Shown here piece after piece: positions 115-5,993 of a DNA stretch of 64,000 bases. Within the stretch, counting starts at the first letter, position 1; the number at the start of each line of letters is the position of its first letter. Made by a program: the position numbers and the translations under genes. The notes under the pieces were generated by a model. That model searched no databases. It worked only from the letters and a program-made list of their open reading frames with translations, and was not told the origin of the DNA. The stretch is taken from IMG/VR virus record IMGVR_UViG_3300020438_000007, positions 1 through 64,000 of that record; one strand, given 5' to 3'.

Positions 115-1203
115 TTAACCGATGGAAGGTGCAGTAAGAGCAACAGGAGTTGACTCAGCAGCAGCGAGATCCAAGGGGAAGTTGTGAGCGTTACGCTCGT
201 GCATGACTTCCATACCCAGACCAGCGCGGTTAAGCACGTCTGCCCATGTTGGAATCACTTTACCACTTGCGTCTACAACCGACTGGTTGAAGTTGAATCC
301 GTTAAGGTTGAATGCCATAGTTGACACACCCATTGCAGTAAACCAGATGCAAACCACTGGGAATGCTGCTAGGAAGAAGTGAAGTGAACGTGAGTTGTTG
401 AAAGATGCGTATTGGAAGATCAAACGACCGAAGTAGCCATGAGCTGCAACGATGTTATATGTTTCTTCTTCTTGTCCGAACTTGTAACCATAGTTCTGAG
501 ACTCTTGCTCAGTTGTTTCTCTGATTAGAGAAGATGTTACGAGTGAACCGTGCATTGCACTGAATAATGAACCACCGAAGACACCAGCCACTCCAAGCAT
601 ATGGAAGGGGTGCATTAGGATATTGTGCTCTGCCTGGAACACGAACATGTAGTTAAAAGTACCTGAGATACCAAGTGGCATTGCATCAGAGAAAGAACCT
701 TGACCGAAAGGATACACTAAGAATACAGCGAATGCTGCAGACACTGGTGCTGAATAAGCAACACAGATCCAAGGACGCATACCTAAACGGTATGAAAGTT
801 CCCACTGACGACCACAGTATGCTGTGATGCCGATTAGGAAATGGAAGACTACAAGTTGGAATGGACCACCGTTATACAACCACTCATCGAGTGATGCTGC
901 TTCCCAGATTGGGTAGAAGTGAAGTCCGATAGCATTTGAACTAGGAACAACTGCACCAGAGATGATGTTGTTACCGTACATTAAAGAACCTGCTACTGGT
1001 TCTCTGATTCCGTCGATGTCTACTGGAGGTGCTGCGATGAAAGCAATGATGAAACATGTTGCTGCTGCCAACAAGCATGGGATCATCAGTACGCCGAACC
1101 AGCCGACATAGATGCGGTTGTCAACTGAGGTTACCCAGCTGCAGAATTCGTCCCATCCTGAGAGGAGACCACCGCGTTGTTTTGAACGTGAAAGAGTTGT
1201 CAT
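115..1203 (-). CDS. psbA: Photosystem II D1 protein
   Basis: Unmistakable D1 sequence ([14 protein letters not shown]...[13 protein letters not shown]). Start placed at MTTLSR (ATG 1203). No intron. Confidence 0.99.
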
Positions 1204-1322
1204 TTGAAAAAGGGTTAGGTAATAGTGCAGGGATACACCGATAAAATATTCCTTCGCCACCCTCAGGCGGAGGTATAAGAGACGTAATTTAATGACCCAT
1301 AGGTCTCGGTTAGCGGGTCAGA
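1204..1322 (-). ncRNA. Structured psbA 5' leader, probably the PhotoRC-II motif
   Basis: TGACCC(1320-1315)/GGGTCA(1298-1293) stem. Loop GAGAC(1307-1303) pairs with GTCTC(1283-1279), giving a pseudoknot. A second hairpin lies at 1251-1273. The position matches the described cyanophage PhotoRC motifs, but the family name is from recall. Confidence 0.65.
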
Positions 1323-1347
1323 AAGATGTTGGAATCAACACCCCTAC

Positions 1348-3179: not shown

Positions 3180-3277
3180 ATACCAACTGCGTTAGTGGTC
3201 GTGCTTACGATCACTGAAATCATAAAGATGTATGGTACAACCTTAAATGGTACTGGTTGTCTCTTTACTGAGTTCAT
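3173..3277 (-). CDS. Small membrane protein (34 aa), not in the ORF track
   Basis: MNSVKRQPVPFKVVPYIFMISVIVSTTTNAVGMF; TAATG overlap with the hli stop. Confidence 0.65.
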   Translation of the reverse strand: MNSVKRQPVPFKVVPYIFMISVIVSTTTNAVGMF

Positions 3278-3399
3278 TACACAAAGCCAGGAATTATTTG
3301 ACCTGTTGTTAGATATGCACCTAACCCTGCGATGATGCCAAGCATGGCAAGTCTGCCATTAAGTTTCTCAGCAACTGATTTTGATTCCTTATCTGTCAT
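3277..3399 (-). CDS. hli: High-light-inducible protein
   Basis: AEKLNGRLAMLG...TGQIIPGF motif; start at MTDKES (3399). Confidence 0.95.
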   Translation of the reverse strand: MTDKESKSVAEKLNGRLAMLGIIAGLGAYLTTGQIIPGFV

Positions 3400-3506
3400 T
3401 AAAAGATGCCTGGAATAATTTGTCCTGTTAAAGCATATGCGCCTACTGCTGCAACGAAACCGAGCATAGCTGCCCAACCGTTAAATCTTTCTGCTTCTGG
3501 TGTCAT
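3399..3506 (-). CDS. hli: High-light-inducible protein (35 aa), not in the ORF track
   Basis: MTPEAERFNGWAAMLGFVAAVGAYALTGQIIPGIF. Confidence 0.95.
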   Translation of the reverse strand: MTPEAERFNGWAAMLGFVAAVGAYALTGQIIPGIF

Positions 3507-3555
3507 GATAGTGTACCTTTTATGTGTTTAAAATGTGTATGATTGGAATCTTCCT

Positions 3556-3747
3556 TTAGAAGATGCCTGGGATGATTTGACCTGTTGTTGTGTATGCAAC
3601 AAGTAATGATACGAAACCGAGCATAGCCCAACGTCCATTCATTTTTTCAGCGTTCTTGCCATACCCTTCATAGGATTCGTCAAGAGTCATCTGAGGTTCG
3701 ATAGAATAGATATTCTGTCTTCCGCCTTGTTCTGTAACAGTTGTCAT
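3556..3747 (-). CDS. hli: High-light-inducible protein
   Basis: AEKMNGRWAMLG...TGQIIPGIF. Confidence 0.95.
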   Translation of the reverse strand: MTTVTEQGGRQNIYSIEPQMTLDESYEGYGKNAEKMNGRWAMLGFVSLLVAYTTTGQIIPGIF

Positions 3748-3771
3748 TGAATTATTAAGAAACGTAACATA

Positions 3772-3800
3772 ATTATATAGTAAAGTTTAAATTTTGTCAA
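3772..3800 (-). promoter_or_regulatory. Consensus sigma70 promoter of the hli operon
   Basis: TTGACA(3800-3795)-17 bp-TATAAT(3777-3772). Confidence 0.85.
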
Positions 3801-3997: not shown

Positions 3998-4533
3998 GAT
4001 TGATTTGGTCCTCTAGGGGGTTCTGTAAGGTAAATGTTACCTGATATCGTAGTTCCCTCTCCGCCACTCGTTACAAAGTGTTCTATCCATGAGGGGAAGA
4101 TAATAATATTACCAGCGGGAACGTTGGGAATGAAATCCATAGAGATTGCAGTACCATACATTGCCCACTGATTCATTATTAATTTACGAGAAGGATTCAT
4201 AAAAACAGTTCTGGAATGATCCACAGACTCCACAATAATGAAACTCCATTGAGCCCCTGAGTGGATGTGTGGATCTTGCCAGTCGTGTTTCTCATATTTG
4301 TTACGCCACACCTGACCAATCACAAAATCATCTGGTATGAACTGTTGTACGCACTCTGCAATGAGTCCTTTAACATATTCATATGATTCATCAGTGAACT
4401 TATCATGTCCCAGTGTTGTAGGACAATCACTAAGGAATGTAGGTTGAAAATCCTCAGATACCAAATTGACCTCATCTAGATCGATGGATTCAACAAAAAA
4501 TGGTGCCGAGAATATTGCGTGTGGATTTCTCAT
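3994..4533 (-). CDS. 2OG-Fe(II) oxygenase-like protein
   Basis: W..Y...HxH (PHIH) and FPSWIEH motifs; ISGN near the C-terminus. Confidence 0.75.
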   Translation of the reverse strand: MRNPHAIFSAPFFVESIDLDEVNLVSEDFQPTFLSDCPTTLGHDKFTDESYEYVKGLIAECVQQFIPDDFVIGQVWRNKYEKHDWQDPHIHSGAQWSFIIVESVDHSRTVFMNPSRKLIMNQWAMYGTAISMDFIPNVPAGNIIIFPSWIEHFVTSGGEGTTISGNIYLTEPPRGPNQS

Positions 4534-4550
4534 GTTGTAATTATAACAGA

Positions 4551-4583
4551 AAAAAGACCCACTGCAATCACAGGGGTCTTTTT
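4551..4583. terminator. Rho-independent terminator overlapping the next promoter
   Basis: AAAAAGACCC...GGGTCTTTTT; TATAAT at 4545-4540 just beyond it. Confidence 0.75.
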
Positions 4584-4609
4584 GTTTTTATATACTAACG
4601 TATCTATGT

Positions 4610-4960
4610 TTAGAAAACGTACTTAGCACCGACTTTAACACCGTATCCATTGTCTGCACCATCAGCAGTTTGGAAAGTTACTTCACCATAACCAAGAACT
4701 GTCTCTGACAAATCAACAGATCCACCTGCCTTAGCAAGGAATTCTGTGTCGCCATCAGTACCGTCAGGTGAGTTTACGATAGGACCGCCTTGAACGAACC
4801 AGTTGGAACCTTCGTAACCAAGTGCGAACTCAGTTGTATTTCCAGTGTAGTCCCCACCAGTGAATGAAGAATTGGCTTCTACATTTACATAAGGACCTGC
4901 GAACGCGGCACCAGCGAAAAGGGGTGCAGCAGCTAAAGCTGCGATTACATTTTTGAACAT
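4610..4960 (-). CDS. Small outer-membrane beta-barrel-like protein
   Basis: Signal peptide (..AGAAFA|GP), amphipathic beta strands and a C-terminal KYVF typical of BAM substrates. Confidence 0.75.
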   Translation of the reverse strand: MFKNVIAALAAAPLFAGAAFAGPYVNVEANSSFTGGDYTGNTTEFALGYEGSNWFVQGGPIVNSPDGTDGDTEFLAKAGGSVDLSETVLGYGEVTFQTADGADNGYGVKVGAKYVF

Positions 4961-4979
4961 TTAAAATTTCTCTCTAATT

Positions 4980-5144
4980 TACTTGCTGATTTGTTACCAG
5001 CAGATGATGGAAGTCTCGACATGACTTCGTGTTAGGTTTTGAACTTAACAGACCTAGCGCGAGTAATTGAGGCATTCGGAATACTTGTTCTCCCACAACA
5101 CGTCTGTTATGGAATGGTGACCCTGGCGGAATCGCCAGTTCCAT
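4980..5144 (-). ncRNA. Structured cis-regulatory RNA, probably the manA motif
   Basis: Paired elements ATGGAA/TTCCAT, CTGGCG/CGCCAG, AACAGAC/GTCTGTT, GAAGTC/GACTTC and TGCTG/CAGCA, with a possible CTCG/CGAG pseudoknot. It lies between the promoter and the ORF. The family assignment is from recall. Confidence 0.6.
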
Positions 5145-5145
5145 T

Positions 5146-5179
5146 TATTTAGTATACCACATGATCGATATCGCGTCAA
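5146..5179 (-). promoter_or_regulatory. Sigma70 promoter overlapping a late promoter
   Basis: TTGACG(5179-5174)-17 bp-TATACT(5156-5151); CTAAATA at 5152-5146. Confidence 0.8.
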
Positions 5180-5186
5180 GTGTTAC

Positions 5187-5993
5187 TTATCCCTGACCTT
5201 GATTTCTGGGATCACCACCAGCGATCCTACCTAGATAAGGATCAAAATCGGATAACATATCAATGGTGATATCCCCACCTCTTGTATTCCAGAGTTCTCT
5301 GAGACCATCGTGACTACCCCTATGGAAGACCTCAATGTGTTCCTCATGGATTGAGGAACCTAGTTCGATCTTGTATAGGAAGACAGGACAGGCATAAGCT
5401 GCACCTGAGTTGTAGATCAGGTCATCAGCGACAGGTCTGGGTTTCACGCCATTGTCGAGTTTGTATTTCTCTCCTCTGACATGAAGTTTCAATAGTTTCT
5501 GAGCATGATGTCTAGTTATTACATAACATGCAGTAGAAAAGTCATTAATAAATCTACGATGAACCTGTACATGTAATTCGCCAGGGCAAATTACTGCAAC
5601 TTGGACTGTATCCCAGTCGTATGGCATCCTAGAGATGAATTGTCTCCATGTAAATGTCCAGAACTGTGCGATACTAATATCACAATCATCTTCCATGATG
5701 ATTGCATAGGGTTCATCAGTCTCTTCAACAAAATGTTTGAGTGCTTTGAGGTGTGATGTTACACATCCTATCTCTCCAGCAGTAATACTATCTGGATACT
5801 TACCAGTTAATATATCACTTAGATCATCCCCTGTAGAGGGTCTACCATCGTATGCAGAGATACGAGTATAGTTTTCTATCTCCCATTCCTTAAGTTGATT
5901 TGACATCCACTCCATTCTCTCTGGCTGTTCATCCAGATTAATAATGTAAAGAGGACCGAATCCTTTAAGTTTGTATGCGGCTTTATTTGACAT
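5187..5993 (-). CDS. Glycosyltransferase family 25
   Basis: YIINL...ER, GEIGCVTSH and IMEDD motifs. Confidence 0.85.
   Translation of the reverse strand: MSNKAAYKLKGFGPLYIINLDEQPERMEWMSNQLKEWEIENYTRISAYDGRPSTGDDLSDILTGKYPDSITAGEIGCVTSHLKALKHFVEETDEPYAIIMEDDCDISIAQFWTFTWRQFISRMPYDWDTVQVAVICPGELHVQVHRRFINDFSTACYVITRHHAQKLLKLHVRGEKYKLDNGVKPRPVADDLIYNSGAAYACPVFLYKIELGSSIHEEHIEVFHRGSHDGLRELWNTRGGDITIDMLSDFDPYLGRIAGGDPRNQGQG

What the first reader, a model, noticed from the sequence alone, without database searches (positions are those of the whole stretch)
4551..5179. Self-contained unit: dual promoter, ~170 nt structured RNA, outer-membrane protein, terminator
Seen: a promoter at 5146-5179, a leader with five stems and a possible pseudoknot, a signal-peptide beta-barrel-type gene ending in Phe, and a terminator. 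The unit sits at the downstream end of the glycan cluster. Knowledge: the manA motif is an orphan riboswitch candidate found in cyanophages, usually near sugar or nucleotide metabolism genes; this assignment is from recall. Inference: a metabolite-sensing RNA controls a phage-encoded host-surface protein used for uptake or superinfection exclusion.
Basis: partly seen in the sequence, partly recalled or inferred. Interest (0 to 1): 0.62.

Follow-up and report, generated by a model that had tools for sequence, protein, structure and literature searches.

The report
Conserved cyanophage leader RNA before outer-membrane gene

Summary
The unit exists as described, on the minus strand: promoter (5179-5151), about 185 nt of leader (about 5144-4961), a 116-aa gene (4960-4610) and an intrinsic terminator (4583-4551). 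The protein belongs to Pfam PF24653 Phage_OMP (also called DUF680, PhCOG173, T4-GC 241): a signal peptide plus six strands, predicted to pair into a 12-stranded barrel. The leader matches no Rfam 15 family, even at E<=10, so it is not manA, wcaG or glnA. It is nonetheless a real conserved RNA structure. Five helices are 93% paired in 12 relatives from at least four named genera, against 30-42% when the partners are slid. The core two-hairpin module just before the start codon is 97% paired in 47 distinct sequences and carries many compensatory changes. A covariance model of that module hits once per phage locus, always just upstream of this gene, once in the 230,739-bp genome, and in none of 151 host-family genomes. 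The leader is modular: hairpins are gained or lost, and some lineages have an internal promoter. I read it as a phage-specific cis-acting 5' UTR that acts on mRNA stability and translation start, probably through a bound factor. A riboswitch is not excluded but is less likely. It is a new member of a known kind and moderately interesting.

The parts
5151..5179 (-). Sigma-70-type promoter: -35 TTGACG (5179-5174), 17-nt spacer, extended -10 TG-n-TATACT (5159-5151). A late-promoter-like CTAAATAA (5152-5145) overlaps it.
   Evidence: 10 of 12 matches, TG present. Both boxes are invariant in alignment A1 with S-SSM7, P-RSM1, P-RSM4 and MbCM1, where the -10 box overlaps a canonical TATAAATA. RNA contigs end at 5142 and 5151 (suggestive only).
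5113..5145 (-). P0: hairpin at the 5' end of the transcript (outer AAUGG/CCAUU, inner CUGGCG/CGCCAG). Present only in the window / S-SSM7 lineage.
   Evidence: Read from alignments A1 and A2. S-SSM7 and L008 keep both stems through changes on both sides. With only four sequences, support is weak. Inferred role: protection of the 5' end.
5093..5112 (-). P1: 8-bp hairpin with the conserved loop GACG.
   Evidence: helix 1: all 8 pairs show changes on both sides, and the inner 5 pairs are well kept. The loop GACG is invariant in A4.
5058..5074 (-). P2, the 'mid hairpin': an 11-nt loop CUCAAUUACUC closed by GC/GC and a U-G pair.
   Evidence: helix 2: one CG-to-GC swap, in P-RSM4. In the wider family an outer helix flanking the same loop covaries, with 6 pair types and 57-73% pairing in register against 16-54% when shifted. 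The 15-nt motif lies 60-150 nt upstream of the gene in 114 of 150 occurrences in the fetched loci. The same hairpin precedes cyanophage porin genes.
5033..5056 (-). P3: UAGGU/ACCUA stem with a loop that varies in sequence and length.
   Evidence: helix 3: 95% paired, but the stem never varies, so covariation gives no evidence either way. The variable loop is consistent with a hairpin.
5010..5028 (-). P4, 'hairpin A': 6-bp stem with loop AUGUCGA. GUCGA is conserved in most of the family.
   Evidence: helix 1: all 6 pairs have changes on both sides and 95.4% of cells are paired. helix 4: 100% paired.
4982..5006 (-). Invariant CAU (5006-5004) followed by P5, 'hairpin B' (5003-4982): 7 pairs with a bulged A at 4983. 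This is the most conserved element of the family.
   Evidence: CAUC and G are invariant in 45 sequences. helix 2: 99.1% paired, with swaps UA/CG, CG/UA and GC/AU/UA. A DNA pattern for this hairpin lies 15-26 nt before the start codon of a Phage_OMP homologue in 112 of 120 IMG/VR hits.
4958..5049 (-). Extent of the covariance-model hit (model R1: hairpins A and B plus the ribosome-binding region).
   Evidence: 79.5 bits, E 1e-15. It is the only hit in the window and in the whole 230,739-bp phage genome.
4961..4981 (-). A/U-rich spacer with a weak purine run GAGAG (4974-4970) before the start codon.
   Evidence: Read from the sequence. Most relatives have ACGAGGUA here, while the P-RSM1 type has no Shine-Dalgarno sequence at all.
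4610..4960 (-). Gene for a 116-aa Phage_OMP protein (DUF680 / PhCOG173 / T4-GC 241): signal peptide about residues 1-21, six beta strands, C-terminal Phe.
   Evidence: Pfam PF24653, E 5.3e-42, 143 bits against a cut-off of 27. AlphaFold2 pLDDT 82.5 with six strands. Homodimer score 0.80 against a best control of 0.00.
4551..4583 (-). Intrinsic terminator: A-tract, GC-rich stem with a bulge, then a U-tract.
   Evidence: -20.7 kcal/mol, z = -4.2. One RNA contig ends at 4570.

Best explanation
The 5' UTR of this gene belongs to a previously uncatalogued, phage-specific family of structured leader RNAs found in T4-like cyanomyoviruses upstream of the Phage_OMP (DUF680) gene.

Shown: the leader is a row of hairpins that covary. 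Its constant core is hairpin A, then an invariant CAUC, then hairpin B with a bulged A. Hairpin B ends 15-26 nt before the start codon. The upstream modules (P0, P1, the mid hairpin with its 11-nt loop, P3) differ between lineages. The element occurs once per genome, only in front of this gene. The mid hairpin alone also precedes phage porin genes. Neither element was found in the host-family genomes searched.

Inferred mechanism: the leader acts in cis on the mRNA. First, whichever promoter is used, the transcript begins in or just before a hairpin. By analogy with the E. coli ompA 5' UTR, this would shield the 5' end from RNase E-type decay. Second, the CAUC/hairpin-B element sits at the 5' edge of the ribosome footprint. 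Its invariant unpaired bases and bulged A look like a recognition site for a trans-acting factor (a phage or host protein, or possibly an RNA). That factor would set or gate translation initiation of a protein that must be made in controlled amounts, because it is exported to the outer membrane.

Transcription comes from a host-type promoter overlapped, in relatives, by a late promoter. This fits the 'Middle' class assigned to the S-TIM4 orthologue.
For: Structure: five helices on 12 sequences give 93.1% of cells paired, against 30-42% with slid partners. Fourteen pairs have double changes, and 0 of 500 shuffles reach the observed covariation score. The core module on 47 distinct sequences gives 97.4% paired and 158 double-change cells against 41 in shuffles. 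RNAalifold finds the same two hairpins independently on a MAFFT alignment.

Specificity: model R1 gives exactly one hit in each of 58 of the 76 sources searched (57 loci and the window), always just upstream of the gene. It gives one hit in the whole phage genome and none in 151 host-family genomes. The hairpin-B pattern lies 15-26 nt from the ATG in 112 of 120 hits.

Conservation: the 3' half of the leader is 79-88% identical to P-RSM1, P-RSM4/S-TIM4 and MbCM1. Matches to other genera over the whole unit, mostly over its coding part, are 67-77%.

Not coding: the 56-aa ORF in the leader is broken by frame shifts in relatives.

Hairpins at the 5' end: 13 of 47 leaders carry a -10 box 6-12 nt before hairpin A by the scan. 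By eye, adding -10 variants the scan missed, the figure is about 19 of 47. P0 starts at the predicted transcription start in the window.

Expression: RNA-library contigs cover the leader and gene. The orthologue is classed 'Middle' (PMC6224464 supplement).
Against: No experiment bears on function. No binding factor is identified. No alternative pairing that would hide the ribosome-binding site was found, so 'regulated' as opposed to 'constitutive' is an inference from conserved loop and bulge nucleotides alone.

The alignment made with the covariance model leans towards the modelled structure. P3 is invariant and P0 rests on four sequences. The metatranscriptome evidence consists of contigs, which cannot show transcript ends or exclude DNA. 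The extreme conservation of unpaired stretches in the window-type leader would also suit an aptamer.
Confidence: 0.5

Rival explanations
1. The leader, at least the extended window-type form (P1 to P5, nearly invariant across four genera), is a new riboswitch. Its aptamer would sense a metabolite and control translation of the outer-membrane protein.
For: Long invariant unpaired stretches lie between covarying helices. The leader is more conserved than the coding sequence. Other orphan riboswitch candidates (manA, wcaG) occur in cyanophages (PMC2864571). Weak alternative pairings exist among invariant segments, for example UAGGU with AUCUG.
Against: No Rfam class matches. The helices are serial hairpins with no enclosing helix, junction or supported pseudoknot. 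Whole modules are missing or replaced in sister lineages while the gene stays the same, and about 40% of leaders have a promoter inside the element. No expression platform that sequesters the ribosome-binding site or forms a terminator was found.
Confidence: 0.15
2. The leader is a passive stability and insulator element with no regulator. The hairpins would only protect the mRNA from RNase E and keep the A/U-rich ribosome-binding site unpaired, giving constitutively high expression.
For: A hairpin sits at each predicted transcript 5' end. The distance from hairpin B to the ATG is constant. The stems covary freely in sequence. The ompA 5' UTR is a precedent (established knowledge).
Against: Passive hairpins do not need invariant loop, bulge and flanking nucleotides. 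Here CAUC, the bulged A, GUCGA and the 11-nt loop are conserved across genera while the stems vary.
Confidence: 0.2
3. The conserved motifs act at the DNA level, as operator sites for a transcription factor near the promoters, rather than as RNA.
For: In several lineages the 15-nt mid motif lies 11-12 bp upstream of the -35 box of an internal sigma-70 promoter, or over the -35 region of an extended -10 promoter. Pho boxes upstream of DUF680 have been reported in some phages (PMC9146016).
Against: The stems flanking the mid motif, and hairpins A and B, covary in the manner of RNA helices, including G-U pairs. Hairpins A and B lie downstream of every predicted start site. By eye, the window leader holds no CTTA-N7-CTTA and no GTA-N8-TAC. 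The motif is not enriched in host genomes: 19 hits, all inside coding sequence and by my rough count fewer than the reversed-pattern control.
Confidence: 0.05
4. The leader is a manA, wcaG or glnA-type known motif, or it encodes the small protein annotated over it in some relatives (P-RSM4 gene 230, S-TIM4 ORF223).
For: A 56-aa ORF lies at 4974-5144, and small ORFs are annotated there in P-RSM4 and S-TIM4.
Against: No Rfam match at E<=10. The ORF frame is interrupted in most relatives by 1- and 2-nt indels in the P3 loop.
Confidence: 0.02

Closest known systems
manA (RF01745), wcaG (RF01761) and PhotoRC-II (RF01717): orphan cis-regulatory RNA motifs of T4-like cyanophages (Weinberg et al. 2010, PMC2864571)
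   Same: They are conserved structured elements in the 5' UTRs of cyanomyovirus accessory genes, were found by comparative analysis, and have unknown function. A true PhotoRC-II sits in this same window before psbA.
   Different: There is no sequence or structure match to any of them. This element has a different gene association (Phage_OMP and porin genes) and a different architecture (serial hairpins, the CAUC/hairpin-B core).
E. coli ompA 5' UTR (a 5'-terminal stem-loop that stabilises mRNA against RNase E; established knowledge)
   Same: It is a long structured leader of an outer-membrane-protein mRNA, with a hairpin at the very 5' end and a second hairpin next to the ribosome-binding site.
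   Different: There is no homology. The role here is inferred, not measured. The cyanophage element has invariant loop and bulge bases that ompA-type stabilisers do not need.
Translational operators of T4-like phages (gene 32 pseudoknot, gene 43 hairpin operator, RegA sites; candidate structured RNAs upstream of gp20 and gp32 in PMC10690425)
   Same: These are hairpins immediately 5' of the ribosome-binding site in a T4-like phage mRNA. A hairpin with a bulged base is a typical protein recognition site.
   Different: No binding protein is known here. The protein product is exported, so it is unlikely to autoregulate. No sequence similarity was tested or seen.
Pfam PF24653 Phage_OMP = DUF680 = PhCOG173 = T4-GC 241 (the protein)
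   Same: Full-length match at E 5e-42. The six-strand half barrel and predicted 12-strand dimer agree with bioRxiv 10.64898/2026.10.24.761521.
   Different: None. It is an ordinary member of the family.
The 8,495 unnamed candidate structured RNAs predicted from IMG/VR (PMC10690425)
   Same: That study used the same data source and the same kind of element, so this motif may be one of the DNAVirus_N entries.
   Different: This could not be checked, because the supplementary files are not held. Nothing about this motif or this gene appears in the main text.

Membership tests
manA RNA motif (RF01745) | Match to the Rfam covariance model at or above its gathering score | tested here: not met
   No match in 4400-5400, even at E<=10, and none in the whole window at gathering thresholds.
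wcaG (RF01761) and glnA (RF01739) RNA motifs | Match to the Rfam covariance model | tested here: not met
   no match in the window or in 12 related loci.
Riboswitch (generic) | Direct, specific ligand binding by the RNA | not testable with these tools
   Needs in-line probing, calorimetry or a similar assay.
Riboswitch (generic) | A conserved aptamer core (junction or pseudoknot) coupled to an expression platform with mutually exclusive pairings | tested here: inconclusive
   Only serial hairpins were found. The alternative pairings involve invariant bases and show no covariation. Modules are gained and lost between lineages.
Conserved structured RNA (new leader family) | Base pairs maintained by compensatory changes beyond controls | tested here: met
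Conserved structured RNA (new leader family) | Consistent genomic association and orientation | tested here: met
   always upstream of the Phage_OMP gene, on the same strand, once per genome.
Pfam PF24653 Phage_OMP | HMM score above the curated cut-off over the full length | tested here: met
   143.4 bits against a cut-off of 27; residues 1-116 on profile positions 1-122.
Outer-membrane beta-barrel protein | Signal peptide, amphipathic beta strands and a C-terminal aromatic residue | tested here: met
   An N-terminal hydrophobic segment ending AFA, six strands in a model with pLDDT 82.5, and a terminal Phe that is invariant in 70 homologues. No dedicated signal-peptide predictor was run.
Outer-membrane beta-barrel protein | A closed barrel located in the outer membrane | not testable with these tools
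   The dimer model closes a 12-strand barrel: score 0.80 against a best control of 0.00. That mark was reached by 21 of 30 proteins solved as pairs of one chain and by 0 of 23 solved as single chains. Foldseek gives only weak hits to outer-membrane barrels, best E 0.09. Localisation needs cell fractionation.
Sigma-70-type promoter | -35 and -10 hexamers at 16-18 bp spacing, conserved in relatives | tested here: met
T4-type late promoter | TATAAATA about 6-8 nt upstream of the start site | tested here: inconclusive
   The motif is canonical in P-RSM1, P-RSM4 and MbCM1. In the window it is CTAAATAA, 6 of 8 by my count. No 5' end data are available.
Intrinsic terminator | GC-rich hairpin followed by a U-tract directly after the stop codon | tested here: met

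The most novel reading that the evidence does not exclude
Cyanomyoviruses run a dedicated post-transcriptional control circuit for the outer-membrane proteins they make in the host. A shared hairpin with the 11-nt loop CNCAAYUAYUY marks the leaders of two unrelated gene families, the Phage_OMP half barrels and the porins. The invariant CAUC/bulged-A hairpin before the Phage_OMP start codon would be the docking site of a still unknown factor or ligand. In the window-type leader, the nearly invariant 130-nt P1-P5 domain could be a new aptamer class.
Probability: 0.2. Interest if true: 0.75.

Novelty: new member of a known kind. Interest (0 to 1): 0.55.

Why it matters
The gene is one of the most widespread cyanophage-specific accessory genes. 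It is present in both T4-like and T7-like cyanophages, and its function is still unknown. Its loss is strongly selected on one host (PMC6224464). A leader RNA that is better conserved than the protein-coding sequence suggests that the amount or timing of this protein is tightly controlled during infection. It also gives experimenters a compact handle of about 45 nt (hairpin A, CAUC, hairpin B) for reporter assays and pull-downs. The shared hairpin before phage porin genes hints that phage-made envelope proteins are regulated together. For RNA biology, the leader would add a well-supported family to the few orphan cyanophage motifs known since 2010.

Tried and rejected
1. Rfam 15 on the window (gathering thresholds), on 4400-5400 (E<=10) and on 12 related loci (E<=1). 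Only PhotoRC-II before psbA, tRNAs and one sub-threshold YrlA match were found, with nothing in the leader.

2. Small-ORF reading of the leader. The frame is not conserved.

3. Pseudoknot search by pairing and covariation over all column pairs of A4. Only the modelled helices covary. The extra complementarities (UAGGU/AUCUG, GCCU/AGGU, CUCG/CGAG) involve invariant bases.

4. Kissing between the P1 loop (GAC) and the hairpin-A loop (GUC). By eye on the sequences, many lineages keep GUCGA while their P1 loop has no GAC.

5. Pairing of the mid-hairpin loop (UACUCG) with the ribosome-binding site (CGAGGUA). The complement is attractive in one subfamily. However, the same ribosome-binding site is kept in leaders without the mid hairpin, and loop variants of the L061 type are not compensated.

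6. Host origin. There was no R1 hit in 151 host-family genomes. The mid motif in 401 genomes gave 19 hits, all inside coding sequence and by my rough count fewer than the reversed-pattern control. Host porin genes fetched from genome contigs carry a GUGUGAGGA box at the start codon instead. From my own knowledge this resembles the Yfr1 target site, and it is unrelated to this leader.

7. Pho box and NtcA box in the window leader. None seen by eye.

8. An upstream ORF starting at the AUG in the hairpin-A loop. That AUG is replaced by ACG, AAG, UAG or UUG in relatives.

9. Leader mutations in the S-TIM4 evolution experiment. All mutations lie in the coding sequence.

10. Checking the 2023 IMG/VR catalogue of candidate RNAs. 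The supplements are not held.

The large protein searches were not used, because Pfam settled the identity of the protein.

Full report
**What the window is.** The window is the first 64 kb of a 230,739-bp, 99%-complete virus record. It is a T4-like cyanomyovirus. The region is 82% identical to Synechococcus phage S-SSM7 (Kyanoviridae, Lipsvirus) with the same gene order. A PhotoRC-II RNA precedes psbA at 1238-1331. Everything in the finding lies on the minus strand.

**The observation.** The promoter is TTGACG (5179-5174), 17 nt, then TG-n-TATACT (5159-5151). In an alignment with S-SSM7, P-RSM1, P-RSM4 and MbCM1 both boxes are invariant. In the last three, the -10 box is fused to a canonical T4-late TATAAATA. 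The window has CTAAATAA there, so the late half of the 'dual promoter' is degenerate in this copy.

The S-TIM4 orthologue is classed 'Middle' by homology to Syn9 (PMC6224464 supplement). From my own knowledge of Doron et al. 2016, which is not in the library, 'Middle' is the class driven by both promoter types.

The leader runs from about 5144 to 4961. The gene (4960-4610, 116 aa) is a full-length member of Pfam PF24653 Phage_OMP (E 5e-42). The terminator is at 4583-4551. Upstream lie glycosyltransferase genes (GT25, DUF6445, GT11). Downstream lie a 2OG-Fe(II) oxygenase gene and hli genes.

Contigs from three RNA libraries, at 100% identity, cover 4972-5142, 4826-5151 and 4570-5381. This is consistent with a start near 5144 and an end in the terminator, but contigs cannot prove ends.

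**The leader is not manA.** Rfam 15 finds nothing in 4400-5400 at E<=10. It finds nothing in 12 related loci at E<=1 apart from tRNAs and one sub-threshold YrlA match.

**The leader is a real conserved structure.** The 3' half of the leader is 79-88% identical to P-RSM1, P-RSM4/S-TIM4 and MbCM1. Matches to other genera over the whole unit, mostly over its coding part, are 67-77%. The intergenic gap of about 260-310 nt is kept even though the upstream neighbours differ.

On 12 window-type sequences I placed five helices (P1-P5). Of the pair cells, 93.1% are paired, against 30-42% with slid partners. Fourteen pairs have changes on both sides, and 0 of 500 shuffles reach the observed covariation score. 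P1, P4 and P5 covary, P2 has one CG-to-GC swap, and P3 never varies. A sixth hairpin (P0, 5145-5113) is specific to the window / S-SSM7 lineage and rests on four sequences. The 56-aa ORF in the leader is not conserved.

**The family.**
- I fetched 80 IMG/VR loci with the protein as query, which is unbiased with respect to the RNA.
- From 45 of these upstream regions RNAalifold recovered two hairpins just before the start codon.
- A covariance model of this module (R1) hits once in each of 58 of the 76 sources searched (57 loci and the window), always ending at the start codon.
- In the resulting alignment, 97.4% of cells are paired and 158 cells carry double changes, against 41 in shuffles. 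This alignment is fitted to the model, which biases it towards the structure.
- The consensus is: hairpin A (variable stem, loop usually nnGUCGA), 2-4 pyrimidine-rich bases, an invariant CAUC, hairpin B (7 pairs, a bulged A, a G-U pair at the top), an A-rich spacer, usually ACGAGGUA, and then AUG.
- A plain DNA pattern for hairpin B found at least 120 IMG/VR stretches. In 112 of them a Phage_OMP homologue starts 15-26 nt downstream.
- R1 hits once in the whole phage genome and in none of 151 genomes of the host family.

**Modularity.** Of 222 distinct upstream regions, 190 have hairpin B, about 85 have the mid hairpin motif and 29 have none of the scanned modules. The sampled leader-less copies lie in T7-like cyanopodovirus contigs, between the scaffold gene and psbA. 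The leader is therefore a trait of the myoviruses.

In 13 of 47 leaders by the scan, and about 19 of 47 by eye once -10 variants the scan missed are added, a -10 box lies 6-12 nt before hairpin A. A short transcript would then begin at that hairpin. A late-type promoter further upstream would give a long leader that includes the mid hairpin. Every predicted transcript begins in or next to a hairpin.

**The mid hairpin.** The 15-nt motif around the 11-nt loop lies 60-150 nt upstream of the gene in 114 of 150 occurrences in the fetched loci. Most of the rest are chance hits in GC-rich phages. An outer helix flanking the loop covaries. The same hairpin precedes porin genes of cyanophages (L234, L243, L289, and S-SRM01 with loop CGCAACUAUUU). 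It is not enriched in 401 host-family genomes.

**The protein.** AlphaFold2 (70-sequence alignment, pLDDT 82.5) gives a low-confidence N-terminal helix (residues 1-21) and six strands. Foldseek finds only weak matches, mostly outer-membrane barrels (best E 0.09).

Two copies of residues 22-116 are predicted to pair first strand to last strand, in both directions. The score is 0.80 against a best control of 0.00. The runs agree in at least 98% of their contacts and the partner's pLDDT is at least 92. The mark was reached by 21 of 30 proteins solved as pairs of one chain and by 0 of 23 proteins solved as single chains. This supports the dimer but does not show it, and it agrees with a recent preprint.

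Published work calls the gene DUF680 or PhCOG173 and proposes a phosphate-stress role. It reports the protein in a virion proteome, and it shows that the gene is knocked out when S-TIM4 is passaged on WH8102. All of those mutations lie in the coding sequence.

**Mechanism.** Shown: a phage-specific, gene-specific, covarying leader with an invariant core at a fixed distance from the start codon. Inferred: it acts in cis on mRNA stability (through the 5'-terminal hairpins) and on translation initiation (through the CAUC/hairpin-B element at the 5' edge of the ribosome footprint), probably through a bound factor. Stems vary while loop, bulge and flank bases do not, which is the pattern expected of a recognition site.

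A riboswitch remains possible, especially for the nearly invariant window-type domain. The serial, modular architecture and the lack of any supported switch pairing make it the less likely reading. DNA-level operators, a small protein and known Rfam motifs are unlikely or excluded.

**Novelty.** The protein is an ordinary member of a known family. The RNA is not in Rfam 15, and I found no description of it in the searched literature. It may be one of the thousands of unnamed candidates of PMC10690425, which I could not check. I rate it a new member of a known kind: an orphan cis-regulatory leader RNA of cyanophages.

Noticed in passing
window 115-1331 (-): psbA (D1) is preceded by a PhotoRC-II RNA (RF01717, 72.1 bits against a gathering score of 39) at 1238-1331. 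This is a textbook instance of a known orphan cyanophage motif.
   Followed up: partly
window 3277-3800 (-): Two high-light-inducible (hli-type) genes (3556-3747 and 3277-3477) lie behind a perfect TTGACA-17-TATAAT promoter at 3800-3772.
   Followed up: no
L234 11661-11760; L243; L289; L318 (S-SRM01) 1420-1535: Cyanophage porin genes carry the same mid hairpin as the Phage_OMP leader. Downstream of it is a conserved 10-codon upstream ORF (MSFSTK...) that ends in an ATGA overlap with the porin start codon, or runs in frame into it. The S-SRM01 promoter has the same early-plus-late layout.
   Followed up: partly
L013, L028, L033, L067, L074 (gene at about 1501): Phage_OMP genes without any leader lie in T7-like cyanopodovirus contigs, between the capsid assembly (scaffold) gene and psbA.
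   Followed up: partly
L009 2065-2421; L016 1883-2236; L018 1650-2006; L052 2070-2426; L056 935-1291; L113 2123-2476: Many myovirus contigs carry a second Phage_OMP paralogue, about 26-32% identical, in tandem directly downstream of the first. In the two examined (L009, L171) it has its own, different upstream region. The window shows no second match to the leader model and no tandem copy directly downstream (the next gene is a 2OG-Fe(II) oxygenase), but I ran no protein search of the window for a second copy.
   Followed up: no
L303, L304, L306, L312, L314 (about 1170-1200): Porin genes of freshwater and brackish picocyanobacteria carry a conserved GUGUGAGGA box right at the start codon. From my own knowledge this resembles the target site of the sRNA Yfr1. 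It is absent from the phage porin and Phage_OMP leaders.
   Followed up: no
L010 765-1343; L052 274-1352; L026 and L036 upstream regions: In several genera the leader and gene follow directly after the phage tRNA gene cluster.
   Followed up: no
window 5123-5138 (+): The inner stem of P0, read on the plus strand, scores as a terminator-like site. No plus-strand gene ends there, so this looks like a by-product of the minus-strand hairpin.
   Followed up: no
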